In this document: piece after piece, positions 12,761 through 39,516 of the stretch | How the letters are laid out: each line of letters starts with the position of its first letter | Numbering within the stretch: position 1 is the first letter of the stretch | Virus record (IMG/VR): IMGVR_UViG_3300044974_001280 | Span: 124,001-188,000 of that record | Strand: one strand, 5' to 3' | Length of the DNA: 64,000 bases | Notes under the pieces: model-generated | What the model saw: only the letters and a program-made list of their open reading frames with translations | Told to the model about the DNA's origin: nothing | Database searches by the model: none | Made by a program: the position numbers and the translations under genes

Positions 12761-12806
12761 ATGTGTATATATCCAACTGGAGAAGACAAAAATTGACTTC
12801 GTAATT

Positions 12807-17864: not shown

Positions 17865-18497
17865 ATGGATTTAGTTAAGAATTTCTCAGATTTTTTAATA
17901 GAAAGAGAATTGCCGGATTCTCAAGGAAAAATTCTAGTTGTGATGGGACCTCCGGGATCAGGTAAAGGAACTTTTTCCGAAAAACTGGCAGATAGGCAAG
18001 GCTTCCACCACATTTCAACCGGAGAATTGCTCAGGAAATCAAAAAACCCGGAGATCAAGAAAAAAGTTGAACGGGGTGATTTCATCGACGATCAGACAGT
18101 TGTAAAGATGATCCGGAGGGAACTGAAGAAAATTGATCCTGATGATGGGATCATTATTGACGGATTCCCCCGGACCGTTAAACAAGCCTCTCTGTTAGAT
18201 TCTTTGCTCGGAAAAATGGGCTTGGGCCTGAGCCACACCATCTATCTGGATATAGACGAAGAAACGGCCAAAGGCAGAATTACTGCCAGGGCGGAAAGAG
18301 AAGACCGGAAGGACGACAAAGATCCAGAGGTGGTGGCTAAAAGATTCAGAGACTATGAAGAAAAAACTGCACCCCTGATTGATCTCTACACAAAAAACAG
18401 AAAACTGAAAAAATATAATGCCGCCAAAGGTAGCGAGAGCGTTTACAAGAAGATCGTGAAGGCCTTAGAACTAAACCGGACCCCTGATTCAGAATAA
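17865..18497 (+). CDS. adk: Adenylate kinase with capsid-targeting-like N-terminal extension
   Basis: GPPGSGKGT, HISTGELLR, DGFPRT, short LID R.DD; N-terminus MDLVKNFSDFLIE. Confidence 0.9.
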   Translation: MDLVKNFSDFLIERELPDSQGKILVVMGPPGSGKGTFSEKLADRQGFHHISTGELLRKSKNPEIKKKVERGDFIDDQTVVKMIRRELKKIDPDDGIIIDGFPRTVKQASLLDSLLGKMGLGLSHTIYLDIDEETAKGRITARAEREDRKDDKDPEVVAKRFRDYEEKTAPLIDLYTKNRKLKKYNAAKGSESVYKKIVKALELNRTPDSE

Positions 18498-20861: not shown

Positions 20862-21301
20862 TGCAGGATAAGATTTTACATAGCATGGAAATGCTTTCCA
20901 TGTACCCAGTAAAAAAATCAGATCTAGGATTTCACGGTAATTTGTTCGGAGGTCAGCTCCTGAAGTGGATAGATGCTGCTGCTGCTGGATACGCCATGCA
21001 GTTGTGCGACACTCCCCGAATGGTGACTGTCTCCATTGATAAGTGCTTCTTTGAAAAACCAGCTCGAGAAGGTCAGTTGCTTAAAATTTACGGGCTGCCA
21101 TCACAAATAGGAAACTCCTCTATCACTCTCTATGTTGAAGCTAGAGCCCACAATGTTTATACGGGTGAGCAGAGATTAATTCTAAGAACCCACATCAGAT
21201 TTGTTAGAATAGACGAGGACGGTAATTCGATCCCTATTTCAGAAAGAGCTAGAATCAGGATTCAGACTCTAATGACGTCAAATTCCGATTCAGTTTCTTG
21301 A
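20858..21301 (+). CDS. Hotdog-fold acyl-CoA thioesterase (YciA-like)
   Basis: DLGFHGNLFGGQLLKWID, VTVSID...F.KP, GNSSI. Confidence 0.85.
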   Translation: MMQDKILHSMEMLSMYPVKKSDLGFHGNLFGGQLLKWIDAAAAGYAMQLCDTPRMVTVSIDKCFFEKPAREGQLLKIYGLPSQIGNSSITLYVEARAHNVYTGEQRLILRTHIRFVRIDEDGNSIPISERARIRIQTLMTSNSDSVS

Positions 21302-21560
21302 CCGAGATCCTGAGATCGGAAGTTCCCTGAATCAGTCTGTGCCACACGCCTTGGGGAATAAGTAATTCGTGCTCCCCTATTTCCCGAGGTAGATCGTTGT
21401 CCAACTGAATCAACCAGTCGTTTTCTTCGAGAGCCCTCACCAATCGATCTTCTAGATCAATGTGCCAATGAAGTTCGGATCTGTCTGTTTTAGCAGAAAA
21501 GAATCTTTCGTAGGTGCTTTCCTCGATCTGTTTTTCTGAAAAAGGTCTAGACTCTACCAT
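21255..21560 (-). CDS. Cupin-like small protein
   Basis: WHIDLEDR...IPQGVWHRLIQG. Confidence 0.55.
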   Translation of the reverse strand: MVESRPFSEKQIEESTYERFFSAKTDRSELHWHIDLEDRLVRALEENDWLIQLDNDLPREIGEHELLIPQGVWHRLIQGTSDLRISVKKLNRNLTSLESES

Positions 21561-22117
21561 GGACTTGAAGATTTAATGCCCAGTAGTTTTCTGTATCTTG
21601 ACACGTTACAGGACCAGTATCTGGCTTTCCATTTGGGACCTGGGTTATCACAATTGTGTCTTGCTCTAAAAGATTTTGATCTCTGAGGATCGTCATTTCT
21701 TATTCTCATACCTGGCTGGCCGAATCTAACTAGAACGACGTTACCAGACTCGTTTTTAGTGTAAACCCCAAATTTTCTAGGAGCACCCGGGGTTCTGAAA
21801 GGTTTGTTCAGAGAAACCTTCCTGCCCTTATATTCTGCCTCGTGCAGATCCTCTTCAGGGAGAGGTAAATCCAGCCACACCTCTTTCCCTTCAAAGATTC
21901 CCCTTCGGCCCAGTTCGGTGCTAATCAAAAAAGTGTCGTCGTCGTCTAATTCAATCGAATTTGATTCCCAAAGGCGTCTAGTCTCATCTATTACCCCGTA
22001 CCAGGCTTCGGAGCCAATTCTAAAGACGCTAGTGGCTAGAGTCAGATCATTTTGGAGGTGATATTGCAGATTTTCACTGATCTGATCCCTAAATTCTCCG
22101 AAGTTCAGTATTTTCAT
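21554..22117 (-). CDS. Conserved large-phage protein
   Basis: EAEYKGRKV...VRFG...SFRARHNC...ARYWSC; N-terminus MKILNFGEF..ISE. Confidence 0.65.
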   Translation of the reverse strand: MKILNFGEFRDQISENLQYHLQNDLTLATSVFRIGSEAWYGVIDETRRLWESNSIELDDDDTFLISTELGRRGIFEGKEVWLDLPLPEEDLHEAEYKGRKVSLNKPFRTPGAPRKFGVYTKNESGNVVLVRFGQPGMRIRNDDPQRSKSFRARHNCDNPGPKWKARYWSCNVSRYRKLLGIKSSSPW

Positions 22118-22125: not shown

Positions 22126-23007
22126 TTATTTTTTTACTTCGTAAGTTTCAATTCTTTTGGCCAGCTCTTTTGCTCTGTTCCCCACTTGCTTGGCCCAGGT
22201 TGAATTGAGCATCTCTTGGGAAGCCAATTTGTAATTCATGTTTTGGATGTGAGATAAGAATTTTTTGAATTCGGACAGGCCCGACTTTCCGAGGTTGAAT
22301 GCCATTTCTATCAAAACACATTGTACCGGTAAGGGCTGTTGACCCAAATCAGGAACCAGAGATTTGGCATCTTCGATAGCTTTATCCACGTCTTTTTTAA
22401 ACAGAATCTGAATTTGACTGTCATTCAATTTCTCTTTTCCCGACCTGATTAATTTTGGATTGGCCCCAATTTCCTTTAACCTGGTATCTGCATCCGATCT
22501 TTCTAGATTCATTCCAATTCCAATTGATAGATTTTTTCTAGAGTCCCGGTAAATTTGATATTTAATACCCTCGTGCAATTTAATGCTTTCTTCCGCGGTT
22601 CTTCTAACTTTTTCGTCCTTCAAACGAGATTCTTCTTGTTTTTGTAAGAAGTCATTTGTGACTTTCAATTGATCCGTGTGTTTTTTTATTTCATCGATTA
22701 TTTTCTGATCAAAAAAACCTAACTCGGAATTAATAAGGGATCCAACACTTCTATATGAATAAACGGCTGGAAATTTAGCAAAAATGGCATCAATTTCCCC
22801 CAGAGTTTTCAAATCAGGAATTTCTAATAAAGTTTTCAGCAACAGTTCTTCGTCCGTTCCTAGACCTTTGATGGATTTTTCCAGTAAATTTGCCAATTCA
22901 ACTGGGCTTCTTCGACCCATTTTTTCCAGAACTAAATCTAAATTAAAGGAACTATTCAAGTTGCTAAAATCTCTGAAGTTTTGAATCCTTCTTATTTTTT
23001 CTTTCAT
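22126..23007 (-). CDS. GH24/T4-type lysozyme with N-terminal annexin-like repeat
   Basis: HEG...YRD...SIGIGMNL, EMAFNLG, EMLNSTWAKQVGNRA; N-part KGLGTDE...SEL. Confidence 0.8.
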   Translation of the reverse strand: MKEKIRRIQNFRDFSNLNSSFNLDLVLEKMGRRSPVELANLLEKSIKGLGTDEELLLKTLLEIPDLKTLGEIDAIFAKFPAVYSYRSVGSLINSELGFFDQKIIDEIKKHTDQLKVTNDFLQKQEESRLKDEKVRRTAEESIKLHEGIKYQIYRDSRKNLSIGIGMNLERSDADTRLKEIGANPKLIRSGKEKLNDSQIQILFKKDVDKAIEDAKSLVPDLGQQPLPVQCVLIEMAFNLGKSGLSEFKKFLSHIQNMNYKLASQEMLNSTWAKQVGNRAKELAKRIETYEVKK

Positions 23008-23038: not shown

Positions 23039-24142
23039 CTAGACAATCCCGTCCTTCCAGGGATCGACGTAGCCCAATTTGGTCTTCAGGGCCTTAATGA
23101 CCCGAAGCTGCTCAGGACTGAGTCTCTGTTCGATCTCCTGTCTCTGCTCCTCCCAGCCTGACTTATCCCAGAGGTCTGCCAGCTGCAGGAGCACCTGGCC
23201 GTCTTTCTTCAGGTCTCCCTTCAGTTTCTGCAGCCAGAAGCCGGCATCGAACATGGGCAGGGTCACAATCAGGCTCCGGGCTTCGCTATCTCCAGTGGCC
23301 AGAATCTTGGTCCAGCCCAGGGGATTCCATGCCCCACTTTGGAGTGTGAAAGAGTCGCACCGGAGAATCCCACCCACCGTCTGTGGTGCCCCGACCAGGG
23401 AGGTCAGCCGGTTATTGTCGCAGTAGAAATTCCCACCCACCGTCTGAGGTGCCCCGGCCAGGGTCGTCAGCTGGTTGTAGGAACAGGAGAAATACCCATC
23501 CACCGTCTGGGGTGCCCCTGCCAGGGAGGTCAGCTGGTTGCCGGAACAGGAGAAATTCCCACCCACCTTCTGGGGTGCCCCTGACAGGGAGGTCAGCTGG
23601 TTTCTGGAACAGGAGAAATACCCACCCACCGTCTGAGGTGCCCCGACCAGGGTCGTCAGCTGGTTGTAGGAACAGAAGAAATGCCCATCCATCGTCTGAG
23701 GTGCCCCGGCCAGGGTCGTCAGCTGGTTGTAGGAACAGTCTAAATCCCCATCCACCGTCTGGGGTGCCCCGACCAGGGTCGTCAGCCGGTTGCCGCCACA
23801 GTAAAAATGCCCATCCACCGTCTGAGGTGCCCCGACCAGAGAGGTCAGCTGGTTTCTGAAACAGGAGAAATCCCCACTCACCTTCTGGGGTGCCCCTGCC
23901 AGGGAGGTCAGCTGGTTGACGGAACAGTAGAAATTCCCACTGACATGTCCGAACGAGATGCCCTGTAAGCTCTTTAATCTTTTACCCCCACAAGCAAAAC
24001 TTCCCTTTACATCCACTAGCCCTGTCTCTGGGTTGACCGACCAGGTCCCTTGCGTGTATTTGGTCAGGAAAGTCTTTTGCTTTTGGGTCAGATCTGAAGT
24101 CTTCCGGGCTTCGAACAGGGAAAAGGATTGGAGGTGTTTCAC
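23039..24142 (-). CDS. LRR-like repeat protein, paralog 1 (9 modules of 21 aa)
   Basis: Modules xFxCxxNxLT(S/T)LxGAPQ(T/K)VxG; GTG start 5 nt after GATATATA (24148-24155). Confidence 0.85.
   Translation of the reverse strand: MKHLQSFSLFEARKTSDLTQKQKTFLTKYTQGTWSVNPETGLVDVKGSFACGGKRLKSLQGISFGHVSGNFYCSVNQLTSLAGAPQKVSGDFSCFRNQLTSLVGAPQTVDGHFYCGGNRLTTLVGAPQTVDGDLDCSYNQLTTLAGAPQTMDGHFFCSYNQLTTLVGAPQTVGGYFSCSRNQLTSLSGAPQKVGGNFSCSGNQLTSLAGAPQTVDGYFSCSYNQLTTLAGAPQTVGGNFYCDNNRLTSLVGAPQTVGGILRCDSFTLQSGAWNPLGWTKILATGDSEARSLIVTLPMFDAGFWLQKLKGDLKKDGQVLLQLADLWDKSGWEEQRQEIEQRLSPEQLRVIKALKTKLGYVDPWKDGIV
23369..23935 (-). repeat. Nine tandem 63-bp coding repeats
   Basis: Recurrent ...caccgtctg(a/g)ggtgcccc...cagg...gtcagc unit. 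Confidence 0.9.
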
Positions 24143-24156
24143 GCCCTTATATATCT

Positions 24157-24939
24157 CTAGACAATCCCGTCCTTCCAGGGATCGACGTAGCCCAATTTGG
24201 TCTTTAGGGCCTTGATGACCCGAAGCTGCTCAGGACTGAGTCTCTGTTCGATCTTCTGTCTCTGCTCCTCCCAGCCTGGTTCATCCCAGAGGTCTGCCAG
24301 CTGCAGGAGCACCTGGCCGTCTTTCTTCAGATCTCCCTTCAGTTTCTGCAGCCAGAAGCCGGCATCGAACAGGATCACAATCAGGCTCCGGGCTTTGCTA
24401 TTTTTTTTGGCCAGAATCTCGGTCCAGCCCTGGGGATTCCATTTCCCACTTCGGACTTCGAAAGAGTCGCAGTAGAAACCCTCCCTCACCGTCTGGGGTG
24501 CCCCGGCCAGGGTCGTCAGCTGGTTTCTGAAACAGTAGAAATCCCCATTTACCGTCTGGGGTGCCCCGACCAGGGAAGTCAGCTGGTTGCCTTGACAGTA
24601 GAAATCCCCACCCACCGTCTGGGGTGCCCCGGCCAGGGTCTTCAGCTGGTTGCCGCCACAGAAGAAACTCCCACCCACCGTCTGGGGTGCCCCGGCCAGG
24701 GTCGTCAGCTGGTTTCTGAAACACCAGAAATCCCCACTGACATGTCCGAACGAGATTCCCCGCAGAGACTTCAGTCTTTTGTAACTACAGTCAAAATCTC
24801 CTTTCACATCGACCAGACCGGTCTGCTGGTTGACCGACCAGGTCCCTTGCGTGTATTTGGTCAGGAAAGTCTTTTGCTTTTGGGTCAGGCCTGAAGTCTT
24901 CCGGGCTTCGAACAGGGAAAAGGATTGGAGGTGTTTCAC
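24157..24939 (-). CDS. LRR-like repeat protein, paralog 2 (4 modules)
   Basis: Same N- and C-caps as paralog 1; GATATATA at 24944-24951. Confidence 0.85.
   Translation of the reverse strand: MKHLQSFSLFEARKTSGLTQKQKTFLTKYTQGTWSVNQQTGLVDVKGDFDCSYKRLKSLRGISFGHVSGDFWCFRNQLTTLAGAPQTVGGSFFCGGNQLKTLAGAPQTVGGDFYCQGNQLTSLVGAPQTVNGDFYCFRNQLTTLAGAPQTVREGFYCDSFEVRSGKWNPQGWTEILAKKNSKARSLIVILFDAGFWLQKLKGDLKKDGQVLLQLADLWDEPGWEEQRQKIEQRLSPEQLRVIKALKTKLGYVDPWKDGIV
24481..24732 (-). repeat. Four tandem 63-bp coding repeats
   Basis: Same unit as 23369-23935. Confidence 0.9.
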
Positions 24940-24952
24940 GCCTTATATATCT

Positions 24953-25936
24953 CTAGACAATCCCGTCAAAGTCTTTCCAGGGATTGACGTAGCCCAATTT
25001 GGTCTTTAGGGCCTTGATGACCCGAAGCTGCTCAGGACTGAGTCTCTGTTCGATCTCCTGTCTCTGCTCCTCCCAGCCTGACTTATCCCAGAGGTCTGCC
25101 AGCTGCAGAAGCACCTGACCGTCTTTCTTCAAGTCTCCCTTCAGTTTCTGCAGCCAGAAGCCGGCATCGAACATGGGCAGGGTCACAATCAGCCTCCGGG
25201 CTTTTCTATCTCCAGTGGCCAGAATGGCCAACCAGCCCTGGGGATTCCATTCCCCACTCCGGAGTTTGAAAGAGTCGCAGAAGAAATACCCACCCACCGT
25301 CTGAGGTGCCCCGACCAGGGTCGTCAGCCGGTTGTGGGAACACCAGAAATCCCGACCCACCGTCTGAGGTGCCCCGACCAGGGAGGTCAGCTGGTTGTTG
25401 TCGCAGTAGAAATTCCCACCCACCGTCTGAGGTGCCCCGGCCAGAGAGATCAGTCGATTGCCGGAACAGCCGAAACTCCTATTTACCTTCTGAGGTGCCC
25501 CGGCCAGGGTCGTCAGCTGGTTGCCGGAACAGTCGAAAACCCCACCCACCGTCTGAGGTGCCCCTGCCAGGGAGGTCAGATGGTTGCCTTGACAGAAGAA
25601 ACTCCCACACACCGTCTGGGGTGCCCCGACCAGGGAGGTCAGCTGGTTGTTGTCGCAGGAGAAATACCCACCCACCGTCTGGGGTGCCCCGGCCAGGGAG
25701 GTCAGATCGTTGCCGGCACAGGAGAAATTCCCACTGACATGTCCGAACGAGATGCCCGATAGAGACCTCAGTCCGCTGTAACTACAGTCAAAATCTCCTT
25801 CCACATCGACCAGACCGGTCTGTCGGTTGACCGACCAGGTCCCTTGCGTGTATTTGGTCAGGAAAGTCTTTTGCTTTTGGGTCAGATCTGAAGTCTTCCG
25901 AGCTTCGAACAGGGAAAAGGATTGGAGGTGTTTCAC
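24953..25936 (-). CDS. LRR-like repeat protein, paralog 3 (7 modules)
   Basis: Same caps; GATATATA at 25941-25948. Confidence 0.85.
   Translation of the reverse strand: MKHLQSFSLFEARKTSDLTQKQKTFLTKYTQGTWSVNRQTGLVDVEGDFDCSYSGLRSLSGISFGHVSGNFSCAGNDLTSLAGAPQTVGGYFSCDNNQLTSLVGAPQTVCGSFFCQGNHLTSLAGAPQTVGGVFDCSGNQLTTLAGAPQKVNRSFGCSGNRLISLAGAPQTVGGNFYCDNNQLTSLVGAPQTVGRDFWCSHNRLTTLVGAPQTVGGYFFCDSFKLRSGEWNPQGWLAILATGDRKARRLIVTLPMFDAGFWLQKLKGDLKKDGQVLLQLADLWDKSGWEEQRQEIEQRLSPEQLRVIKALKTKLGYVNPWKDFDGIV
25289..25729 (-). repeat. Seven tandem 63-bp coding repeats
   Basis: Same unit as 23369-23935. Confidence 0.9.
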
Positions 25937-26047
25937 GCCTTATATATCTGTTATACCTCCCTGAATAGCACCACCTCGAAACCTTAAAAAATTCTGTCAT
26001 AGAAGACTTTCAATTGCATTTATGTTTTACATTTACACTTCTACACC

Positions 26048-27835
26048 ATGACTATCCAACCCAGCAAAAAAATCCAGGTCCTTAGCGACTTCGAGCACAT
26101 ATTAAAAAGGCCTACTATCTACGTTGGCTCCGTTAAGTTATCGGAGGAAATGATTCCTTCGGTAGAAAGCGATAAAATTTGTCTGGTCCCTAAACAAATT
26201 TCAGTTGGGATGTACAAACTCTTTGACGAAGTCTTTTCCAACTGTGTGGATGAAGCCAAACGCATGAAAAAATCCATGCCCTGGATAAAAGTTTTTGTGG
26301 ATCCAATTCGAAACTCAGTGACTATTACTGACAGCGGAGGAGGTTTTGTTGATGGATCTCAAATTAACGAAAAGAGCAAAATGAGCAACATCCAGACTGC
26401 TGTTTCTATGCTCAGAGCTGGTTCTAATTTTGACAATGAGGGCACCTCTGAAACTCTGATTGGTACCAACGGAATGGGGGTTAGTTTAGTCAATGCTCTG
26501 TCATCTTTCTTTTCAATTCACACCACTAACACTAAAGAATCCTACCGTCAGGAATGGAAGAATTTTAAATCCAGCAAACCTGAGGTTCTGCCCAGGCAGA
26601 CGGAAGAATTAGGTACTTCAGTGTCTTTTGTGCCTTTAGAAACAATTTTTGATGGGTGCCGATGGGATCGCCAAATTCTTCATTCCATCCTGATTCTGAA
26701 GAAAAGAGTCTTAGAATCTGAAGCTCACACCCGAAAAATCGACATTGAGTTTCACTGGGGACCCGAAAGAATTTATATTACAACCGATGTTCTCCACCAG
26801 TTATCTTATAAGAATTCACTGGGGGAAATTTTAATCTGGGAAAAAACGGAGAATTCGGGGTCGTTAGCTTTTGTAAACAGTGCCATGTGTACAGGGATCC
26901 ACCAGAAGATTATTCTGGATCTCATCAACGGAGAACTCGAGGATTCTTTGGGTCATCACTTCTACGATTTTTGCTTAATTCTGAACCTACCCCCCGCCTT
27001 AGTAAAGTTCGGGGACCAGAACAAAACCAAATATGTGACAAAGCGGGAAGAGATTGAAAGGCTTATTACTGATTCGTTTGAACCTCAAATCAAAAAATTT
27101 TTTTCCACACCTCTTTTCAAAAAAATCAGAGATAAGGTTGAAGAAAGAAAAAAAGACACGGCCCTCAAAAAAATCAGGAAAGAGAAAAAATCAATTAATA
27201 TCAAATTCTCTCATAAGTATTTTCCGCCTAACTCTAGAGTAGCAGAAAATATTTTTATTGTTGAAGGTCTATCGGCCATGGGCAGTATTCTTCAGAAAAG
27301 AAGCCCTGCCCGGGACGGTGTTTATGCACTGAAAGGCAAGATCAAAAACGCCAGAAATCTGTCCGACCTCTCAGATAACAAAGAGATATTGGAATTGATG
27401 CACATCCTGAATCTGGACCCAGGATTAGACTCAGGCCAATGCCCCTACCAAAAAATCATTATCGCCACCGATCAGGATCCTGATGGATCCCACATTACTT
27501 CCCTTCTCATCTCCCTCTTTCACAACTGGTTTCCCTGGGTTATTGCCAAACGTATGCTTTATATTCTAGAAACACCCTTGGTTACCTCTGGTGACAAGCA
27601 GAAAGAGTATTTCTATTCTCTGGCGGAGTATAAAGAGGCTAGCTCCAAGAAGAAAATGTCCAACATCAGATATCTTAAAGGTTTAGGTTCTCTATCTTTG
27701 GACGATTGGGATTATGTCATGAAAAATAAAAGAATAGTTGCCATTGTGGGAGATAAGAAATCTAAACAAATGCTCGAAATGGCTTTCGGTAATTCTTCAG
27801 AGCTTCGTAAGAACTGGTTGCAAAATAAAATCTAA
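26048..27835 (+). CDS. Type II topoisomerase ATPase/TOPRIM subunit (gp39+60/GyrB-like)
   Basis: HILKRP..YVGS, EVFSNCVDE, GSNFD, GTNGMG, VEGLSA, LKGKI, DQDPDG, YLKGLGS. Confidence 0.9.
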   Translation: MTIQPSKKIQVLSDFEHILKRPTIYVGSVKLSEEMIPSVESDKICLVPKQISVGMYKLFDEVFSNCVDEAKRMKKSMPWIKVFVDPIRNSVTITDSGGGFVDGSQINEKSKMSNIQTAVSMLRAGSNFDNEGTSETLIGTNGMGVSLVNALSSFFSIHTTNTKESYRQEWKNFKSSKPEVLPRQTEELGTSVSFVPLETIFDGCRWDRQILHSILILKKRVLESEAHTRKIDIEFHWGPERIYITTDVLHQLSYKNSLGEILIWEKTENSGSLAFVNSAMCTGIHQKIILDLINGELEDSLGHHFYDFCLILNLPPALVKFGDQNKTKYVTKREEIERLITDSFEPQIKKFFSTPLFKKIRDKVEERKKDTALKKIRKEKKSINIKFSHKYFPPNSRVAENIFIVEGLSAMGSILQKRSPARDGVYALKGKIKNARNLSDLSDNKEILELMHILNLDPGLDSGQCPYQKIIIATDQDPDGSHITSLLISLFHNWFPWVIAKRMLYILETPLVTSGDKQKEYFYSLAEYKEASSKKKMSNIRYLKGLGSLSLDDWDYVMKNKRIVAIVGDKKSKQMLEMAFGNSSELRKNWLQNKI

Positions 27836-27846: not shown

Positions 27847-28773
27847 TTGAGACACGGCTACTGCTGCATCAATCTAACTCTGGGTGAAACTCAGGGCCAA
27901 CCCCGGATTACCACCAACAGGTCAATGGTGAAAAAAACATTTCTGGCCAAAGGACTGGACTATGTGTCTGAACTGGCTTTGGCCAATTGCAGAGATCTAA
28001 TTCAAATCATTAAATGGAACAATCAGCAGGGGGTAAGAATGTATCGAATGTCCTCTGATATTTTTCCCTGGTGTAGTGAATACGAGTTTTCAGATCTACC
28101 TGGGTTTGCCGAGATCAAATCTTTTTTGCAAATGGCGGGAGAAGAGGCCAAAATGGGGGATCAAAGACTAACTTTCCACCCTTCCCACTTCGCAGTTCTG
28201 GCATCCAAACAAGACTCAGTGGTTCGGGCTGCCCAAAAAGATCTTAGGCAACACGCAGAAATTATGGATTTGATGGGTTTAGATCAGTCATATTTCTACC
28301 CCATTAACATCCACGTCAACACTTCCCAGCCTACGAAAGAAGAAGCAGCAGAGAGATTCTGCCGACAGGTAGAGCTCACTCCTCCTAATGTCAGAAAAAG
28401 ATTGGTAGTGGAGGTGGATGACAAGAAGTCTGGCTTTCACGCCGAGGATCTTTTTAGGCTGGTTCATCAGAGAGTAGGGATTCCCATTACCTTCGACTTT
28501 CTTCATAATCAATGTCACCCCTCTGCTCTCTCCGAAGAAGAAGCCCTTAAGCTCTGCTTCTCTACCTGGCCGGCTGGAACAGTGCCCGTAGTTCACTTCT
28601 CTTCTTCCAAAAAGAAGTACGAAGATGCCCAGGCAAGAGAGGTTGCCCACTCAGATTGGATCTATGAAAGTGTGGCTCATTACGGATTAGAGATAGATAT
28701 AGAATTCGAGGTCAAAATGAAAGAACTTGCTCTCTTAGCCTACCTCAGAGATTTTCCTTTCATTCTCCCATGA
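27847..28773 (+). CDS. uvsE: UV-damage endonuclease
   Basis: GYCCIN, YRMSSD, LTFHP, INIH, EVDD, FDFLH, HFS, HSD, EVKMKE. Confidence 0.9.
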   Translation: MRHGYCCINLTLGETQGQPRITTNRSMVKKTFLAKGLDYVSELALANCRDLIQIIKWNNQQGVRMYRMSSDIFPWCSEYEFSDLPGFAEIKSFLQMAGEEAKMGDQRLTFHPSHFAVLASKQDSVVRAAQKDLRQHAEIMDLMGLDQSYFYPINIHVNTSQPTKEEAAERFCRQVELTPPNVRKRLVVEVDDKKSGFHAEDLFRLVHQRVGIPITFDFLHNQCHPSALSEEEALKLCFSTWPAGTVPVVHFSSSKKKYEDAQAREVAHSDWIYESVAHYGLEIDIEFEVKMKELALLAYLRDFPFILP

Positions 28774-28808
28774 AATTTTTTAGTCAACCTGTCATATAAA
28801 ATGCACTT

Positions 28809-29069
28809 ATGAAAAAAATAGAACCAATAGACCTCCAAAAATTCCAGGAATTTGAGCAAGAAATTCTCCAACTTGAAGTTCCCCGTGTCAAGTACACTCC
28901 AGATTTAGAAATTCAGGCCGAAGTCAGAAGACAGGTCCTAGCTGAGAATTTCGGGGAAGAGAAGCTGGCCGAAGTTTTGGCTGCAACTGGATTCGAAGCC
29001 CGAGATCTAGGAGTAGATCACCTCTTTTTTCAAGTTAACAAAACCCTTCAAAATACCCTGGCCCAGTGA
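28809..29069 (+). CDS. Hypothetical protein
   Basis: 86-aa ORF after a GAAAT-type promoter. Confidence 0.55.
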   Translation: MKKIEPIDLQKFQEFEQEILQLEVPRVKYTPDLEIQAEVRRQVLAENFGEEKLAEVLAATGFEARDLGVDHLFFQVNKTLQNTLAQ

Positions 29070-29410
29070 GCAGTTTTACTAGAAACTTCGATTTGTCCGG
29101 TTGGGGATCTTCCTTTGAAGATCATCCACAACACGCCGTGCTGAAGAAAAATATCGATCGGGCAGTCCACGATATTTTTCTTCAGGCTCTGAGAGAGCAA
29201 CACAATGAATTCTTATCAATTTTCGAGTCCGAGAATAAAATCGAAGACTTTGTCAGCAGAACTCTGAAATATTGGGAGGAGGAAGAAAAATATGAAATTT
29301 GCGCCGAGATTCAAAAATTAAAAACGCAGGTCATTCAGAAATGGAAGGGGATGCCTCTCATAGATAAAACACAGGCCAAAAAATTAAGGGATTTTTTACA
29401 GGGTCTTTAA
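29066..29410 (+). CDS. Small protein with UVR-like motif
   Basis: [20 protein letters not shown]. Confidence 0.6.
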
Positions 29411-29415
29411 ACTGT

Positions 29416-30459
29416 ATGAAGAATTATTATCAAATTCTTGGGGTGACCAAAGAATCTACTCCGGAGGAAATCAAAAAGAATTACCGAAAGCTAGCTCTTC
29501 AATACCATCCAGATAAAAACAATCAGGATCCTGCTGCCGCCGAAAAATTCAAAGAAGTTTCTGAAGCCTATGAGGTTCTAAGCAATCCCCAAAAAAAGTC
29601 TCAATATGATCGGCCTGCGTCCCCATTTGGAAATCATCCTTTCCAGGGAGGAAGAGGACCATTCCAATGGGGATTTGGAGATCTTTTTAACAATTTTAAT
29701 AATAATACTACCTATAATGGAGGTATAAGAAGGGGCAAAAATATCACCGCAAAACTCCAGGTGACTCTAGAGGAGAGCATCAAGGGTTCTAAGAAGATCG
29801 TTAACATCTTTAGAAGATTGCCCTGCAATCCCTGTCAAGGAACTGGAGCTAAAGACGGTAAAATTAGAATCTGCCCTGCTTGCATGAGTTTGGGTTTCAT
29901 TAAAAAGGTCGTCAATACTGGATTTGGTCAAATGTCGATCGATGAAACCTGCTATACCTGTTCGGGGATCGGTGAGATAGCGGAAGAGCTTTGTATCTAT
30001 TGTACAGGATCTGGCACCATCAGAAAAACAGATCAGGTTGAAATAAAAATTCCCGCTGGATCCGTCTCTGGGATTTCTTTTAAACTGGATGGCAAAGGTG
30101 ATTTTGATAAAGTACCTTGCGATCCTGGGGATCTGATCGTCGTTGTAGAAGATATGGACCATCCATTTTACAAAAGAGATGGCATTAATTTAATCTGCGA
30201 CTGCGAGATCAACTTTGTTCAGGCTTGCCTTGGGACTGAAGTCAAAATCCCGAGTCTGGAAAATCCTGATCGTGAATATAAAATTTCTATTCCCCCGGGC
30301 ACGGATCCTGGTAAAATATTGAGACTGGCGGGGAAAGGTGTTCCTGAATTTAACACTGATTTTAGAGGAGATCTTCTGGTGAGAATTAAACTGCTAATTC
30401 CCAAGGAGCTGGATGAAACTCAGCGGGAATTTCTGGCTACATATCAAAAAATATTTTAA
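29416..30459 (+). CDS. dnaJ: Molecular chaperone DnaJ
   Basis: J domain with HPD, G/F region, four CxxC zinc-finger repeats, C-terminal domain. Confidence 0.95.
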
Positions 30460-30823: not shown

Positions 30824-30849
30824 GGGATATATAAAGAAAAAAATCCCTC

Positions 30850-31920
30850 ATGAAATCATCTAAAGTTCTGAATTTTCAAGATTTTCTCGGTCTGTCAACG
30901 GACAGAATAACAGAGAATGAAAAAATTCAGGATATTTTAAAAGATGCCATTGGGGAAGTTGCCCCACTGATTCCCAAAACAGGGGGAGAAAGCGGTGGTC
31001 TAAAAGAACCAATTATCAAGTCAGGTAAAGATTTACAGAATATGTTTTGGTCTACCAGTATGGGCAAGAGATTTTTAGAAAAAACGGATGAAGATTATCG
31101 AAAGCAGATGTCCGAGAAAGGTCTCCTAGACAGCAAATATTTATCTGATGAAGGAACTGGATCAAGAAATGCACCTTCCGGCAATATCTCAAAGGAAAAA
31201 GAATTGCAAGATATGCTCGATAGAATGGGAATGGGAAAAAGTGGAGATATAGATTTCGGTAAGTTACCAGACGGAGGATCTTACGAATTTAGTGAGGCCA
31301 AAGAAATGGATTGGAGTGATCTCAGCCAACTATTGAAAAAAGAAGGAATCAAGTACCCGTCCGATAAATACACTCTTGTTGCTCTGAGAAACAACCTGGT
31401 GGTGAAGAAAAAAATGCCCAATCGTTTCACCGATGCACTTTTCTTACTAGGTCCCGACTCCAATAAAACAGTCCAATTTTATCCAGCCACCACCACACCT
31501 GGGCCAGCCTTTATGGTAAAAAGTTATCGGAATTTAATGGCTAGTAGGGGCAATGCTTCCGGCATTAACCCCAAGGGGCTAGCCATCATTCAACCGGGTG
31601 TTTATACCTATAAATTGGGTAAGCACAAAGGGAAAGAGGATGCATTAATCCAGGCAGAACCAGTCACGGTTCATAGATACACGCCAGTCGATTCTGAAAG
31701 TCAGGCAACATTTAAAACTTTTTCACCGGGCAATGAAGAAAAAGGTGAATTTGGAATCAACATTCATCAAGGAGCTGATATAGATACCGTCGATAACATT
31801 AGCAGTGGCTGTCTTGCCACCCAGTACAAAAAAGACATGAAAGAGATCATCAAGAAATTGAAAGATGCCGGCCAAGATCAGATCGAATTGGTTCTTTTAG
31901 ATCTAGATTCAATTAATTAA
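30850..31920 (+). CDS. Putative YkuD/L,D-transpeptidase-like murein-acting protein
   Basis: ATTTPG...PGVY...GINIH...SSGC; N-terminus VLNFQDFL; GATATATA 30826-30833. Confidence 0.5.
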   Translation: MKSSKVLNFQDFLGLSTDRITENEKIQDILKDAIGEVAPLIPKTGGESGGLKEPIIKSGKDLQNMFWSTSMGKRFLEKTDEDYRKQMSEKGLLDSKYLSDEGTGSRNAPSGNISKEKELQDMLDRMGMGKSGDIDFGKLPDGGSYEFSEAKEMDWSDLSQLLKKEGIKYPSDKYTLVALRNNLVVKKKMPNRFTDALFLLGPDSNKTVQFYPATTTPGPAFMVKSYRNLMASRGNASGINPKGLAIIQPGVYTYKLGKHKGKEDALIQAEPVTVHRYTPVDSESQATFKTFSPGNEEKGEFGINIHQGADIDTVDNISSGCLATQYKKDMKEIIKKLKDAGQDQIELVLLDLDSIN

Positions 31921-31977: not shown

Positions 31978-33342
31978 TTGAAAGTACTTAGTATCACAGA
32001 GCAGATCGAAACCCAGTATCGTGAATATGCCCTGTACGTCCTGCAATCCAGAGGTATACCTAATTTTTATGATTCATTGACCCCGGTCCAGAGGATCGTA
32101 CTAGAAAACAGCCCAGCTATTTTTCAAAAAACCATCGGCTTGGTAGGGGAGGTTATTCGAACTGGCAGATATCACCACGGAGATTCTTCAATCGCCGGAG
32201 CGATCTCTAAATTAGCCAGACCCTTTGGGTGCTCAGGGTCCCTGTTGGAAGGGGATGGTTTTTTTGGTTCTCCTGTCAATCCCAATCCCTCTGCTCCTAG
32301 GTACACCTCAGTCAGGGTCAATCGGGGCATCAAAGAAATCATCTTTAAACACTACGATCTGAATGAAAAGAACGAGGAAGGGGGTTTTGATTGGTTGCAC
32401 ATTGAAACCCCTATTGGACTTTTAACCCACATTGTGGGGATTGCCGTCGGATACAGAAGCAACATTCTACCGAGAAAACTAGAAGACATTCAAGAATTTT
32501 TAGAAGGCAAGAACAAGATTCTTAAACCACATTTCAAAGATTTTGGAGGCAAAATTTTCAAATACGAAGATCAGGATAACGTGTGGCTGCTCGAAAGCGG
32601 ATTTGAGGTTCAACCCGAAAAAAAATCGATCCGAATCTTTGATCTTCCTCCAGTTATGAGATATGATTCTTTCATGGATAAATTATTGACTAAACTGGAA
32701 AAAATGGGCAAGGAATACAGGTTGGGTAACAATTCGCAAAGTAAATGTGATCTGACTCTCACCTTCTCGAAACTTTCGGCACCAGAATTTTCTGTCATGA
32801 CGGACGCAGTTAAAAAGATGACCCAGATTATTGTTAAAGAAGATGTTGTTTTTATCAAAGACGGAGCAGTACGCCAATATTCTTCAATTAAAGAATACCT
32901 GGGGGAATTTGCGGTGCATCTGGAGGACCTAAAACTTAAAAGATTCATGAAAGATGAAAAGGATCTAACCCATGAGTTGGCCTATTTAGAGGCCAAACTC
33001 AAATTCCTAATCTACATGAGTCAAACTAGAAGAAAGAACGATGAGATTTCCCAGTTTCTAACCCAGTTTTCTAAAGAAATTGCAGGAAGACTTTCCTCTA
33101 TCCAATTGATTAAACTCTCCTCGAATCACATCCAAGAGACAGAGCAAGAAATCAAAGAGATCAAGTCTCGCCTTCAATCCACCAAAAAGGCAATCCAACA
33201 GCAACAAAAAGCAGTTGCCCAGATTAAAGCGACCCAGAAAAAAGGAGCGGCGGTGTTACTGGCAGGTCCAACCCAGACTGCTTTTAAATTATCAGATGCA
33301 GAGATAGAAATTTTTACCCCTAGCGACGAGGAACAAGAATAA
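31978..33342 (+). CDS. Type II topoisomerase breakage-reunion subunit (gp52/GyrA-like)
   Basis: R.IP...D.LTPVQR, YHHGDSS, SAPRYT catalytic Tyr, GIAVGY. Confidence 0.9.
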   Translation: MKVLSITEQIETQYREYALYVLQSRGIPNFYDSLTPVQRIVLENSPAIFQKTIGLVGEVIRTGRYHHGDSSIAGAISKLARPFGCSGSLLEGDGFFGSPVNPNPSAPRYTSVRVNRGIKEIIFKHYDLNEKNEEGGFDWLHIETPIGLLTHIVGIAVGYRSNILPRKLEDIQEFLEGKNKILKPHFKDFGGKIFKYEDQDNVWLLESGFEVQPEKKSIRIFDLPPVMRYDSFMDKLLTKLEKMGKEYRLGNNSQSKCDLTLTFSKLSAPEFSVMTDAVKKMTQIIVKEDVVFIKDGAVRQYSSIKEYLGEFAVHLEDLKLKRFMKDEKDLTHELAYLEAKLKFLIYMSQTRRKNDEISQFLTQFSKEIAGRLSSIQLIKLSSNHIQETEQEIKEIKSRLQSTKKAIQQQQKAVAQIKATQKKGAAVLLAGPTQTAFKLSDAEIEIFTPSDEEQE

Positions 33343-34044: not shown

Positions 34045-34806
34045 ATGAAAATTAGAGTAACCAGCACGAGTAATTTCATCCTTTTTCTCAAGAAGCTAAA
34101 AGTCGTCGACCGAAGCGTCTTGCTAGAATTAACAGAAACGGATCTTTTTTGTAAAGTTCACACCCCCGATAAATCTGTCATGAAATTCTCCAGAATTCCC
34201 ACTAATCTTATTTTTGATTCCTTAACTGAATTTTCAGCCCTTAAGTGTGACAGAATTAAAATAGGTCTGCTGGATATTACCAGACTGATGGATAGCTTCC
34301 GCTATTTTAGGTCGGAGGAGGAAGTTTTTTTACACCTGGAAATTGCCACTATTGATGATGAGTGTGTCGCAACGGAATTAAAATTGATCTCCCCCTCTCT
34401 GAAAATAAGGATCAAATGTGCTGATCTATCTTTGCTTTCTTATGTGGAGGATTCCATTTCTGATCTGGTTCAAAGTCAAGAAGATGCCTTGGCCAGTTTC
34501 AAATTTTTTGTTTCTGATTTCTCTTCTGTTTCTTCCCTCTGTGGAATGGAGTCCAACTCCGAAGAGCTGCTAAACTTCTCACTTCACTCGGACTACGTCA
34601 GAGTTATCGGAGAATCTTTTGACTATAAATTGACTATTGGAAGCTCTGACATAGATTGTGCCAAGCCCTTAGATGCTTCGATTTACAAATCACATTTGAA
34701 CTATGTAGATCCTGAATCATGCATTTGCTTCTTCCATGAGAACAGAATAGTCTTTGCCTCTGATCAAACCCCTACTTCCACCGCTATCGGCATTATCGAA
34801 AAGTAG
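34045..34806 (+). CDS. Probable DNA polymerase sliding clamp (gp45/PCNA-like)
   Basis: About 250 aa acidic alpha/beta pattern, early-type promoter, near polymerase and topoisomerase genes; no diagnostic motif. Confidence 0.45.
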   Translation: MKIRVTSTSNFILFLKKLKVVDRSVLLELTETDLFCKVHTPDKSVMKFSRIPTNLIFDSLTEFSALKCDRIKIGLLDITRLMDSFRYFRSEEEVFLHLEIATIDDECVATELKLISPSLKIRIKCADLSLLSYVEDSISDLVQSQEDALASFKFFVSDFSSVSSLCGMESNSEELLNFSLHSDYVRVIGESFDYKLTIGSSDIDCAKPLDASIYKSHLNYVDPESCICFFHENRIVFASDQTPTSTAIGIIEK

Positions 34807-35608
34807 AGAAATATCCCCTCATATTGCTCAGAATTTTCACTTTTTTCTTCGTATTGAGATCTAGAACTTTTTCTAGCTCCCGTCTGAAATTGGCAACTTC
34901 TGGATATTCCCAAAACATAGCTAGATCCACCATGCGATCTGGATTATCGACAATATAATTCTTCAAGAAATTTACATCTAAAAAAGGAAGGGTTGAAATC
35001 AGAGCTTCAATACGGGTAAAATTTTTGGATTTAGCTTCTTCTAAGGCTTGTATCCAACCTAGATAATTCCATTTACCTTCATTAAAATCGACCAAATCGG
35101 AGTAAAAACCTTTCTTCAATTTAACTGGAGCTCCTACCAAACTGGTTAAGGGATTACCAAAGGCCAAGTACTGCCCACCAACTTCAACAGGACCCCCAAC
35201 TAGATCTTTAAGATTGTTGTTGTTGCAAGAGAAATTCTTCCCTATTTTAGTAGGTCCTCCCTGCAAGGAGGTCAAAGAGTTATCGCTACAGTTGAAACTT
35301 CCTTGAACTTCTTGTGGAAATCCCTCTAGATCTTGAAAAAAATTTCTAGTGCAATAAAAAACCCCGGTCACCTTGCCAAATCCGATCCCCTTGAAAATAT
35401 CAATTTCCCGGGTCTGATTAAAAGGTTCAGAAAGATAAAAATTGCCTGTGATGTCCACCCTGTCAGTTTTCCTGTTCATTTCCCAGGTGCCAACAACGTG
35501 TTTATTTAAGATTTCTGTTTGCTTTCTGGACAATCTTGTGCCAGCTGCCCGATCTCCTTTTTTTGCCTCGAAAATTTTAAAACTTTGAATGGGGTTCTCC
35601 TTTTGCAT
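34793..35608 (-). CDS. Divergent LRR-like repeat protein, paralog 4
   Basis: Four xFxCxxNxLxxLxGxP modules and similar caps; IQSFKIFEA N-terminus; GATATATA 35613-35620. Confidence 0.75.
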   Translation of the reverse strand: MQKENPIQSFKIFEAKKGDRAAGTRLSRKQTEILNKHVVGTWEMNRKTDRVDITGNFYLSEPFNQTREIDIFKGIGFGKVTGVFYCTRNFFQDLEGFPQEVQGSFNCSDNSLTSLQGGPTKIGKNFSCNNNNLKDLVGGPVEVGGQYLAFGNPLTSLVGAPVKLKKGFYSDLVDFNEGKWNYLGWIQALEEAKSKNFTRIEALISTLPFLDVNFLKNYIVDNPDRMVDLAMFWEYPEVANFRRELEKVLDLNTKKKVKILSNMRGYFSTFR

Positions 35609-35671
35609 CAATTATATATCTAGGAATGGAAACAAACCAGCCTTCTAGCATAAAATAAACACAATCAAAAA

Positions 35672-37244: not shown

Positions 37245-37301
37245 ACCATCTAATTTTTTCAGAGTTCTAGATATATAGAACATCTAAAAAAAATTCTCTG
37301 G

Positions 37302-39512: not shown

Positions 39513-39516
39513 CACT

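What the first reader, a model, noticed from the sequence alone, without database searches (positions are those of the whole stretch)
23039..25936. Variable-LRR gene array: fixed caps, shuffled 63-bp modules, hypervariable binding face
Seen: three tandem genes with nearly identical 69-aa N-caps and C-caps hold 9, 4 and 7 modules of xFxCxxNxLT(S/T)L(A/V)GAPQ(T/K)VxG. Scaffold codons are almost invariant while the x positions vary strongly (NFYCSV, DFSCFR, HFYCGG, DLDCSY, YFSCSR, DFWCFR, SFFCQG, VFDCSG, DFWCSH and others), often with aromatic residues. Sub-module blocks recur across genes in new combinations: CFRN in genes 1 and 2, CGGN in 1 and 2, CQGN in 2 and 3, NFYCDNN in 1 and 3. The region is GC-rich (36/60 at 23401-23460) against a much more AT-rich background. 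A diverged fourth paralog lies at 34793-35608. Established: those positions form the concave ligand-binding sheet of LRRs, and lamprey VLRs diversify by module assembly between constant caps. Inference: a recombination-driven repertoire of protein binders, late-expressed and tagged for packaging, possibly injected inhibitors of variable host defence proteins.
Basis: partly seen in the sequence, partly recalled or inferred. Interest (0 to 1): 0.85.

Follow-up and report, generated by a model that had tools for sequence, protein, structure and literature searches.

The report
Hypervariable LRR gene arrays in jumbo phage
An uncultured 267-kb phage carries at least 13 small leucine-rich-repeat genes whose predicted binding face changes quickly by recombination and selection, probably a set of binders aimed at variable host molecules, though the target is unknown.

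Summary
Three tandem minus-strand genes (367, 260 and 327 aa) each have a 69-aa N-cap, then 9, 4 or 7 modules of 21 aa (63 bp), then a helical C-cap of about 108 aa.

- **Variation.** It sits at module positions 1, 3, 5, 6, 8 and 20. There pN/pS is 3-4, against 0.36 for scaffold positions.
- **Fold.** AlphaFold gives a confident LRR solenoid (pLDDT 90.5).
- **Population.** The array is identical in five assemblies of one population. In a relative whose flanks are 99.7-100% identical, it is only 83-86% identical and has a different module number.
- **Recombination.** One metagenomic allele is a clear mosaic, with a breakpoint inside a module.
- **Copy number.** The same genome holds a second array of at least 6-7 genes and further paralogues.
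- **Distribution.** Arrays of up to 13 such genes occur in many uncultured large phages, and all members are unannotated.
- **Mechanism.** No reverse transcriptase or template repeat was found, so this is not a DGR. Nothing suggests VLR-style somatic assembly. It is an inherited multigene family diversified by in-register recombination and selection.
- **Leader.** A conserved, disordered 12-residue N-terminal leader ends in L-F-E|A/S and resembles the T4 capsid-targeting sequence. Unrelated ORFs also carry it. Packaging and ejection are therefore plausible but unproven.
- **Unknown.** The target and the host.

The parts
24953..25936 (-). LRR gene g3 (327 aa, GTG start). Leader 25901-25936; N-cap 25730-25936; 7 modules 25289-25729; helical C-cap plus stop 24953-25288.
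   Evidence: AF2 model pLDDT 90.5.
24157..24939 (-). LRR gene g2 (260 aa). N-cap 24733-24939; 4 modules 24481-24732; C-cap plus stop 24157-24480.
23039..24142 (-). LRR gene g1 (367 aa). N-cap 23936-24142; 9 modules 23369-23935; C-cap plus stop 23039-23368.
34793..35611 (-). Diverged paralogue g4 (272 aa, 4 recognisable modules). It has the genome's own GC, a related leader and the same upstream motif.
25940..25949 (-). AGATATATAA motif 3-4 nt before the start codon of g3. The same motif lies at 24943-24952 (g2), 24147-24156 (g1) and 35612-35621 (g4).
   Evidence: 21 matches in the window against 5.3 expected.
22126..23007 (-). Co-oriented downstream gene (293 aa) with a C-terminal lysozyme domain and an N-terminal tag of the same type (I-x-x-F-x-x-F). 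It is absent from the syntenic locus of relatives.
21255..22117 (-). Two conserved small genes (187 and 101 aa) that end the minus-strand block. They are present in relatives with or without LRR genes and so mark the insertion hotspot.

Best explanation
**What it is.** The three genes belong to a phage-specific multigene family with at least 13 members in this 267-kb genome. Each protein is small, basic and lacks a signal peptide. Its parts, in order:
- a 12-residue disordered leader;
- an N-cap;
- a solenoid of 2-11 cysteine-ladder LRR modules of 21 residues;
- a six-helix C-terminal domain of unknown fold.

**How diversity arises (shown).** Diversity is inherited. In-register homologous recombination and gene conversion act between the 63-bp modules and between paralogues. 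This changes module number, makes hybrid modules and moves modules to new positions. Positive selection then keeps the solvent-facing residues different while the scaffold stays uniform, even at synonymous sites. The three genes are also compositionally foreign, so they were probably gained by horizontal transfer into a variable slot between conserved core genes.

**What the proteins do (inferred).** They act as a panel of binders with different specificities for variable host molecules. The most likely targets are host proteins met inside the cell, in takeover or counter-defence.

**How they are delivered (inferred).** The leader works like the T4 capsid-targeting sequence. The proteins would be loaded into the prohead, trimmed after the conserved Glu, and ejected with the DNA.
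For: **Anatomy and fold**
- (pLDDT 90.5, pTM 0.84).
- Foldseek's best matches are short bacterial LRR domains and viral LRR proteins.

**Selection**
- Across 66 modules from 11 close paralogues, pN/pS is 3.8 at positions 1, 3, 5 and 6. It is 0.36 at scaffold positions, 0.54 in the N-cap and 0.75 in the C-cap (the window alone).
- The variable residues are mostly D, S, N, Y, G, F, W, H and R.
- In the model, short strands fall on module positions 2-3 and 18-19. Positions 1, 3, 5 and 20 alternate with the buried F2, C4 and V19.

**Variation among relatives**
- L018 is 99.7-100% identical in the topoisomerase flank. It is 83-86% identical in the array, with indels and 6 modules in place of 7.

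**Recombination**
- The allele P0001/L092 matches g3 modules 1-4 at 251 of 252 nt.
- It switches at about nt 20 of module 5, ends in a g1-like C-cap and has 5 modules.
- Near-identical modules sit at different ordinal positions.

**Family size**
- A second array and further paralogues lie in the same genome.
- More than 3360 relatives exist in metagenomes.
- IMG/VR holds 412 matching stretches, with up to 13 tandem genes per locus.
- The family is practically absent from 185,579 representative bacterial and archaeal genomes.

**Accessory island**
- It is absent at this locus in L005-L012 and arranged differently in L004.
- GC3 is 0.23-0.28 above the neighbouring genes.

**Leader**
- The consensus is M-K-H-L-Q-x-F-x-L-F-E-[A/S]. 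E11 is present in 59 of 61 members, and the leader is disordered in the model.
- Ten unrelated ORFs carry it. Among them are a CX5R phosphatase-like protein and an HExxH protein. Three of the ten also share the family's C-terminal tail.
- The T4 capsid-targeting sequence is MKTYQEFIAE (10.1101/2021.01.19.427310).
- The T4 head protease cuts after L/I-x-E, first shown at a Glu-Ala bond. Residues 4 and 7 of the targeting sequence target, and 8 and 10 direct processing (PMC9026906).
- T-even internal proteins are a diverse set of anti-restriction proteins that share only that leader (PMC3012670).
- A related N-terminal tag is enriched among window ORFs: 15 of 86 against 4.5 expected. Two of them are cell-wall-hydrolase-domain proteins.
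- The LRR proteins have pI 8.4-9.3.
Against: **Function and delivery**
- No target, virion proteomics, transcript data or cleavage evidence exists.
- No prohead protease or head gene lies in the window or in the roughly 45 kb of other sequence read from this genome. The T4 analogy therefore rests on a 10-12-residue resemblance.
- The array sits among replication and nucleotide-metabolism genes, not structural genes.

**Population sampling**
- The array is invariant in five assemblies. Their flanks are also identical (one SNP in 17.8 kb), and the samples may come from one site. This limits what can be said about the rate of change.

**Assembly**
- All variant alleles come from short-read metagenome assemblies. 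Paralogues share stretches of about 250 identical bases in the C-cap, so some arrangements (L018, L092) could be partly chimeric. Their module sequences are nonetheless absent from the window genome's known arrays.

**Method**
- pN/pS among repeats within and between paralogues is not a comparison of orthologues.
- High GC3 is not a family-wide property. The difference from neighbours has both signs across phages.
Confidence: 0.45

Rival explanations
1. **Virion-surface adhesins or host-range determinants.** The LRR proteins dock on the capsid, collar or fibres through the conserved leader or the C-terminal tail. They bind variable host surface structures or environmental polymers. The arrays give the phage several alternative specificities.
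For: - LRR domains on accessory fibres have been proposed as host-recognition elements in phage Goslar (10.64898/2026.04.21.720040). The same was proposed for a vibriophage tail-module protein (PMC10945359).
- The second array lies next to a 1075-aa beta-propeller/Laminin_G_3 protein that matches a virion structural PHROG.
- Conserved termini around variable middles are typical of modular fibre adaptors.
- Hypervariability fits an arms race at the cell surface just as well.
Against: - The proteins are small and predicted to be monomeric. They have no recognisable fibre, baseplate or decoration domain.
- The window array lies among replication genes. The cultured Vibrio phage homologue sits next to a DnaB-like helicase.
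- One buried cysteine per module, with no disulphide-type caps, suits a cytoplasmic protein.
- Thirteen or more receptor-binding proteins of one fold would be unusual.
Confidence: 0.2
2. **Intracellular binders that are not packaged.** The proteins are made after infection and bind host or competitor-phage proteins. The shared N-terminal tag serves something else: co-regulation, chaperone or Clp-ATPase recognition, or localisation.
For: - The evidence for a diversified binder is the same.
- The genomic setting is among early- or middle-type genes.
- The phage encodes its own DnaJ and a ClpB-like ATPase.
- The tag also occurs on an ATP-grasp enzyme and other ORFs that need not be virion proteins.
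Against: - The leader ends in the exact L-x-E|A/S form that T4-type head proteases use. It is disordered and separable.
- Two peptidoglycan-hydrolase-domain proteins carry the tag. That is most easily explained if tagged proteins travel with the virion.
Confidence: 0.25
3. **Programmed hypermutation or assembly.** This would be either a diversity-generating retroelement or a VLR-like cassette assembly that rewrites the modules during the phage's life cycle.
For: - Variable codons are mostly NNT or NNC with a fixed third base, which looks superficially like DGR output.
- The architecture has constant caps and variable modules.
Against: - No module-like template copy lies outside the genes.
- No YxDD-bearing ORF lies in the window. 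None lies in L093, L094, L016, L018 or L001.
- There are 66 different modules in 11 genes, far more than one template could serve.
- Exceptions at non-A positions occur (TGG, CAA, AGA, AGG).
- The arrays are identical in five assemblies.
- All copies are complete genes separated by 10-14 bp, with no bank of partial cassettes.
Confidence: 0.03
4. **Neutral repeat turnover.** A horizontally acquired repeat family expands and contracts by slippage and decays under relaxed constraint, with no adaptive binding repertoire.
For: - The genes are compositionally foreign.
- Tandem repeats are inherently unstable.
- Contigs often break in the arrays.
Against: - All copies examined are intact ORFs.
- Scaffold pN/pS is 0.36, so scaffold positions are under constraint.
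- Variation is confined to six positions, with pN/pS above 3.
- The family is conserved across hundreds of phage contigs.
Confidence: 0.05

Closest known systems
T-even phage internal proteins (IPI/II/III, Alt) and their hyperplastic locus
   Same: - Both are diverse cargo proteins that share only a short N-terminal leader. The leader has hydrophobic or aromatic residues at positions 4 and 7 and ends in L/I-x-E.
- Both loci differ between close relatives.
- Both sets of proteins are basic.
- Both fit an arms-race logic (PMC3012670, PMC9026906).
   Different: - Here the cargo is an LRR solenoid family with more than 13 paralogues and internal module turnover.
- The leader is one residue longer.
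- Cleavage, packaging and a head protease are not shown.
- The phage is only distantly T4-like: its topoisomerase is 30% identical to those of isolates.
Tandem LRR protein loci of Flavobacterium psychrophilum (PMC10392669)
   Same: - Both are tandem arrays of LRR genes with conserved ends, variable repeat number and localised hypervariable positions.
- Both show recombination signatures and differ between strains.
   Different: - Those are bacterial cell-surface proteins with a signal peptide and a type-9 secretion C-terminal signal. Their arrays are interspersed with gene fragments.
- Here the genes are phage-encoded, lack a signal peptide and have different caps. They are tightly packed, 10-14 bp apart, with no fragments.
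Lamprey and hagfish variable lymphocyte receptors
   Same: Both have constant N- and C-terminal parts around a variable number of LRR modules. Both concentrate diversity on the concave sheet.
   Different: - VLRs are assembled somatically from cassette banks into an incomplete germline gene.
- Here every copy is a complete inherited gene, and no somatic variation is seen.
Cysteine-ladder 21-residue LRRs of the Listeria internalin J type, and the short LRR domains of bacterial type-III-secreted LRR effectors
   Same: - The repeat is 21 residues long.
- A cysteine replaces the third scaffold leucine in every module.
- These are the nearest sequence model and the nearest solved folds.
   Different: - The score is far below the family cut-off (56 against 1700 bits).
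- There is no signal peptide or cell-wall anchor.
- There is no E3-ligase domain. The C-terminal domain has no fold match.
Expanded repeat-protein families of giant viruses (LRR, FNIP/IP22, ankyrin)
   Same: Both are large paralogous families of repeat binders in big viral genomes. They are structurally similar by Foldseek.
   Different: - Their hosts are eukaryotic and their repeat classes differ.
- They lack the shared leader and C-terminal domain.

Membership tests
Leucine-rich repeat superfamily | Tandem repeats with the LxxLxLxxN-type scaffold, including a conserved Asn | tested here: met
   All 66 modules have F2, C4, N7, L9 and L12 (F2 in 65 of 66).
Leucine-rich repeat superfamily | Curved solenoid fold with one strand per repeat on the concave side | tested here: met
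   AF2 pLDDT is 90.5, with regular short strands in every module. Foldseek probability is 1.00 to solved LRR domains, though E-values are only 1.5e-3 and weaker.
Leucine-rich repeat superfamily | Match to a curated LRR profile above its cut-off | tested here: inconclusive
   Pfam LRR_4 scores 27.5 bits against a cut-off of 27 for g1 only. g2, g3 and g4 fall below it.
Diversity-generating retroelement target | A reverse transcriptase and a template repeat near the variable region | tested here: not met
   There is no module-like copy outside the genes. No YxDD ORF lies in the 64-kb window or in five related loci. The rest of the 267-kb genome was not read.
Diversity-generating retroelement target | Variation restricted to template adenines and visible within a population | tested here: not met
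   Changes occur at non-A positions. The arrays are identical in five assemblies.
VLR-type somatic assembly | An incomplete receptor gene flanked by banks of partial LRR cassettes | tested here: not met
   All copies are complete ORFs separated by 10-14 bp.
T4-type capsid-targeted internal proteins | An N-terminal leader of about 10 residues ending in L/I-x-E and shared by otherwise unrelated proteins | tested here: met
   See the leader consensus. Ten non-LRR ORFs carry it. For the T4 comparison see 10.1101/2021.01.19.427310 and PMC9026906.
T4-type capsid-targeted internal proteins | Cleavage by the prohead protease and presence in the mature head | not testable with these tools
   This needs virion mass spectrometry on an isolate.
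T4-type capsid-targeted internal proteins | A prohead protease and T4-like head genes in the same genome | not tested
   The structural region of the 267-kb contig was not reached. The parts read hold none.
Flavobacterium-type surface LRR arrays | A signal peptide and a type-9 secretion C-terminal domain | tested here: not met
   The N-terminus is a polar leader with no hydrophobic stretch. The C-terminus is a helical domain with no known family.
NEL-type LRR E3-ligase effectors | A C-terminal novel-E3-ligase domain after the LRR | tested here: not met
   The C-cap (111 aa as modelled) has six helices. It has no Pfam, PDB-sequence or PDB-fold match.
Known anti-phage defence proteins | Match to a PADLOC model | tested here: not met
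   None of the seven proteins of the block gave a hit.

The most novel reading that the evidence does not exclude
Large uncultured phages carry an inherited 'repertoire' of LRR binders. Each has a different concave face. Each carries a capsid-targeting-type leader, so the whole panel is preloaded in the head and injected with the DNA. On entry it neutralises whichever variable host defence proteins the cell holds. This would be a virus-side counterpart of an innate immune receptor family. The same leader and tail system would also deliver enzymes such as phosphatase-like, metalloprotease-like and cell-wall hydrolase proteins.
Probability: 0.25. Interest if true: 0.9.

Novelty: new variant of a known kind. 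Interest (0 to 1): 0.7.

Why it matters
**Scale of the gap.** The family is large: more than 3360 proteins, in hundreds of phage contigs, and about 5% of this genome. It is phage-specific and entirely unannotated. Neither cap has a Pfam family, and the C-terminal fold has no match.

**What it would add.**
- It shows the hallmarks of a molecular arms race in a compact scaffold. If the targets are host defence or surface proteins, it would be a new and widespread class of phage counter-defence or host-range factor.
- It is also a natural library of small, cysteine-ladder LRR binders.
- The shared leader and tail on unrelated cargo could define the injected or virion-associated proteome of a whole group of uncultured jumbo phages from sequence alone.

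**A practical point.** These arrays are a frequent cause of contig breaks in phage metagenome assemblies.

Tried and rejected
**Hypotheses rejected**
- *DGR.* No template repeat and no reverse-transcriptase motif were found.
- *VLR-like cassette bank.* No partial copies exist.
- *Assembly artefact.* The array is identical in five assemblies.
- *GC-biased gene conversion as a general cause of the high GC3.* Across 64 loci the GC3 difference has both signs. Horizontal acquisition is preferred for this phage.

**Searches that found nothing informative**
- megablast of 10 kb against 50,697 phage records found no match.
- Pfam, NCBIfam and PADLOC gave nothing for the caps.
- PDB sequence and fold searches with the C-cap gave nothing.
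- Sigma-70 promoter and terminator scans were at chance level.
- Two scans of 185,579 bacterial and archaeal genomes gave one 3.5-kb MAG contig, probably phage.
- Literature searches for phage LRR arrays, LRR ejection proteins and the Vibrio phage homologue gave nothing specific.
- The review of LRRs in dsDNA viruses (Arch Virol 2021) is not held.

**Not reached**
- One step along the contig was an attempt to reach the head genes. It found only more family members and unannotated genes, so I stopped.
Full report
**1. What is there**

The finding's coordinates hold three tandem ORFs on the minus strand: g1 23039-24142 (367 aa), g2 24157-24939 (260 aa) and g3 24953-25936 (327 aa). They are separated by 10-14 bp. 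Each has three parts:
- a 69-residue N-terminal part;
- 9, 4 or 7 modules of exactly 21 residues (63 bp);
- a C-terminal part of 107-111 residues.

Tandem Repeats Finder reports the three 63-bp arrays with scores 361-815. A fourth paralogue, g4 (34793-35611, minus strand), is 38% identical.

**2. The genome**

- The window belongs to a 267,006-bp contig of an uncultured phage.
- The window encodes a split type II topoisomerase, ribonucleotide reductase, family B DNA polymerase pieces, UvdE, DnaJ, a ClpB-like ATPase and sugar-modifying enzymes.
- No cultured phage is close. megablast finds nothing, and the topoisomerase is 30% identical to those of T4-like isolates.
- Only 2 of 41 well-defined genes have a Shine-Dalgarno core, and their upstream regions are 79% A+T. 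From general knowledge of translation initiation, this points to a Bacteroidota-like host. This is an inference.

**3. Fold**

- With a 24-sequence alignment, AlphaFold2 gives a confident model of g3 (pLDDT 90.5, pTM 0.84). Residues 1-13 are disordered. A helix and a hairpin follow, then a regular solenoid with short strands at module positions 2-3 and 18-19, then six helices (232-325).
- Foldseek's best solved matches are the short LRR domains of bacterial secreted LRR proteins (probability 1.00, E 1.5e-3 and weaker).
- The best viral matches are LRR proteins of giant viruses and of uncultured tailed phages.
- Every module has a cysteine where classical LRRs have the third leucine. The only curated model hit is the cysteine-ladder internalin J model, far below its cut-off.
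- Modelled alone (pLDDT 83.8), the C-terminal domain has no fold match (best E 2.0) and no PDB sequence match.

**4. Where the variation lies**

- *Entropy in the window.* Among the 20 window modules, positions 1, 3, 5 and 6 carry 2.2-2.4 bits. Positions 8 and 20 carry 1.3-1.9 bits. Most scaffold positions carry none, and five scaffold codons are identical in all 20 copies.
- *Wider set.* I added the close paralogues from the same genome and from a strain-level relative. This gives 11 distinct genes and 66 modules, all different at the protein level.
- *Selection.* Pooled Nei-Gojobori values give pN/pS of 3.8 at positions 1, 3, 5 and 6. The values are 0.36 at scaffold positions, 0.54 in the N-cap and 0.75 in the C-cap.
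- *Residues.* The variable residues are mainly D, S, N, Y, G, F, W, H and R.
- *Surface.* Positions 1, 3, 5 and 20 alternate with the buried F2, C4 and V19 on the strands. Positions 6 and 8 flank the ladder asparagine. By the standard LRR geometry this is the concave face and its ascending edge.

**5. Is the array variable in nature?**

- *One population is uniform.* Five assemblies carry the array without a single difference: three IMG/VR contigs and two NCBI assemblies. Their flanks are also identical, with one SNP in 17.8 kb. This rules out misassembly and ongoing hypermutation. It says little about evolutionary rate.
- *A close relative differs.* Contig L018 comes from a different study. 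It is 99.7-100% identical through the topoisomerase gene but only 83-86% identical in the array, with indels. The gene in the g3 position has 6 modules with different variable residues. The next gene has another C-cap type.
- *A mosaic allele.* In L092 (P0001), modules 1-4 equal g3 modules 1-4 at 251 of 252 nt. Identity stops about 20 nt into module 5. The gene has 5 modules, and its 3' end is g1-like.
- *Modules at new positions.* Near-identical modules occur at different ordinal positions. g3 module 7 is 96.8% identical to module 1 of a gene in the second array.
- *More distant relatives.* With the same gene order, they have either two LRR genes in another arrangement (L004) or none at this locus (L005-L012).
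- *Caveat.* All alleles come from short-read assemblies, so some arrangements may be chimeric. The module sequences themselves are new.

**6. More copies**

- The 267-kb contig begins inside a second array. A 40-kb contig from another sample shows at least six complete tandem genes there, with 6, 5, 11, 5-6, 6 and 6 modules. They have the same caps and the same high GC.
- Two further members lie 8 kb away.
- The genome therefore has at least 13 members.
- Contigs often stop in these arrays. Examples are L014, a 3.7-kb contig and the 267-kb contig. By my count, about 21 of 73 IMG/VR loci do so too.

**7. The wider family**

- More than 3360 proteins match at E<=1e-3. All are called hypothetical.
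- IMG/VR holds 412 matching stretches. Tandem arrays reach 12-13 genes per 13 kb.
- The C-terminal domain defines 135 clusters among 1.84 billion representatives. It is always at the C-terminus and ends in a conserved tail of the type D-L-x-x-L-G-F.
- Two scans of representative bacterial and archaeal genomes found one short MAG contig.

**8. Composition**

GC3 is 0.57-0.76 in g1-g3, caps included, against 0.36-0.44 in neighbouring genes. g4 has the genome's own composition. Across 64 loci the GC3 difference has both signs. I therefore read the excess here as horizontal acquisition, not as a general effect of recombination.

**9. Mechanisms excluded**

- No module-like template lies outside the genes, and no reverse-transcriptase motif occurs in the window or in five related loci. 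Together with point 5, this rejects a DGR.
- There is no bank of partial cassettes, so VLR-type assembly is not the mechanism.

**10. The leader**

- *Consensus.* The first 12 residues follow M-K-H-L-Q-x-F-x-L-F-E-[A/S]. The Glu is present in 59 of 61 members, and A or S follows in 57.
- *Shared with other proteins.* In the fetched phage loci the same leader heads ten ORFs with unrelated bodies. Among them are a CX5R phosphatase-like protein and an HExxH protein. Three of the ten also end in the family's C-terminal tail.
- *Enriched in the window.* An N-terminal tag of the form hydrophobic-x-x-F-x-x-F/Y occurs in 15 of 86 ORFs, against 4.5 expected. Both proteins with cell-wall-hydrolase domains carry it.
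- *The T4 precedent.* The T4 capsid-targeting sequence is MKTYQEFIAE (10.1101/2021.01.19.427310). The T4 head protease cuts after L/I-x-E. Residues 4 and 7 target and 8 and 10 direct processing (PMC9026906). T-even internal proteins are a diverse anti-restriction set that share only that leader (PMC3012670).
- *Status.* The resemblance is striking but short. Packaging, processing and ejection remain inference.

**11. Verdict**

*Shown*
- This is a phage-specific LRR multigene family arranged in tandem arrays.
- Module number and variable face differ between close relatives.
- Recombination breakpoints lie inside modules.
- The variable positions bear a strong signature of diversifying selection.

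*Inferred*
- The proteins are binders for variable host molecules.
- They are delivered through a capsid-targeting-type leader.

*Unknown*
- The target, the timing of expression and the host.

The closest analogues are the T-even internal-protein locus (for its logic) and the Flavobacterium psychrophilum LRR loci (for its genetics) (PMC10392669). It is a member of neither.

Noticed in passing
L016:1-6100, L017:1-2090, L093:16400-22566 (start of the same 267-kb contig): A second tandem array of at least 6-7 LRR genes has the same caps and GC 0.56-0.58. The 267-kb contig and several others begin or end inside it.
   Followed up: partly
window, 21 sites, e.g. 4774-4783, 10719-10728, 30825-30834, 37269-37278, 48611-48620, 59207-59216: The motif AGATATATAA (up to 1 mismatch) occurs 21 times against 5.3 expected. 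It lies 0-37 nt upstream of ORF starts. These include every LRR gene and two virion-structural-like genes (window 10732-12429 and L093:10001-13228). It could be a phage promoter or an initiation signal. For the LRR genes the spacing would fit leaderless transcripts.
   Followed up: partly
window ORFs 859-1452, 5650-6993, 17865-18497, 21554-22117, 22126-23007, 30850-31920, 37302-38768, 39487-39843 and the four LRR genes: An N-terminal tag of the form hydrophobic-x-x-F-x-x-F/Y occurs right after the start in about 12-15 of 86 ORFs (4.5 expected). Two cell-wall-hydrolase-domain proteins and an ATP-grasp enzyme carry it.
   Followed up: partly
L038:5333-5986, L040:4017-4670, L040:4686-5354, L034:8867-9613(-), L089:2231-2857: Non-LRR ORFs in other phage contigs carry the same 12-residue leader. 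Three also end in the same C-terminal tail (A-D-L-G-E-L-G-F). One has a CX5R phosphatase motif, with weak DSPc and Y_phosphatase3 hits. One has HExxH.
   Followed up: partly
window 28237-29436: A second mosaic patch covers UvdE and the small genes after it. It is only 86-90% identical to the strain-level relative L018, while the surrounding sequence is 98-100% identical. Recombination with diverged relatives therefore also occurs outside the LRR array.
   Followed up: no
whole window (41 ATG genes of at least 130 aa): Only 2 of 41 genes have a GGAG/GAGG core upstream. The leaders are A-rich (79% A+T, with many poly-A runs). This suggests a host that initiates translation without Shine-Dalgarno pairing, such as Bacteroidota.
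   Followed up: no
window 12660-14210 and 35672-36826: Two separate ORFs 21 kb apart both match family B DNA polymerase. One matches PHROG DNA polymerase and the other a partial Pfam DNA_pol_B. The polymerase appears to be split, like the topoisomerase II (26048-27835 and 31978-33342).
   Followed up: no
window 51000-58000: A low-GC island (0.29-0.35) holds sugar-modification genes: a DegT/DnrJ aminotransferase, an FkbM methyltransferase and glycosyltransferases nearby. This may serve DNA or virion glycan modification.
   Followed up: no
proteins P0015, P0019, P0057, P0120 and others: A second architecture uses the same 21-residue modules. These are 510-640-aa proteins with an N-terminal domain of about 300 aa (some hit PF14284), 8-12 modules and only a 27-aa C-terminus. 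One is annotated from an Alphaproteobacteria MAG.
   Followed up: no
IMG/VR loci L022-L091: By my count from the table, about 21 of 73 loci have the LRR match within about 1.3 kb of a contig end. This is far more than chance, so these arrays are a common cause of assembly breaks in large-phage metagenomes.
   Followed up: partly
window 59914-60966 and 42327-44792(-): The phage encodes a glutamine-synthetase-like protein and an 821-aa ClpB/ATP-dependent-protease-like ATPase. A DnaJ homologue lies at 29416-30459.
   Followed up: no
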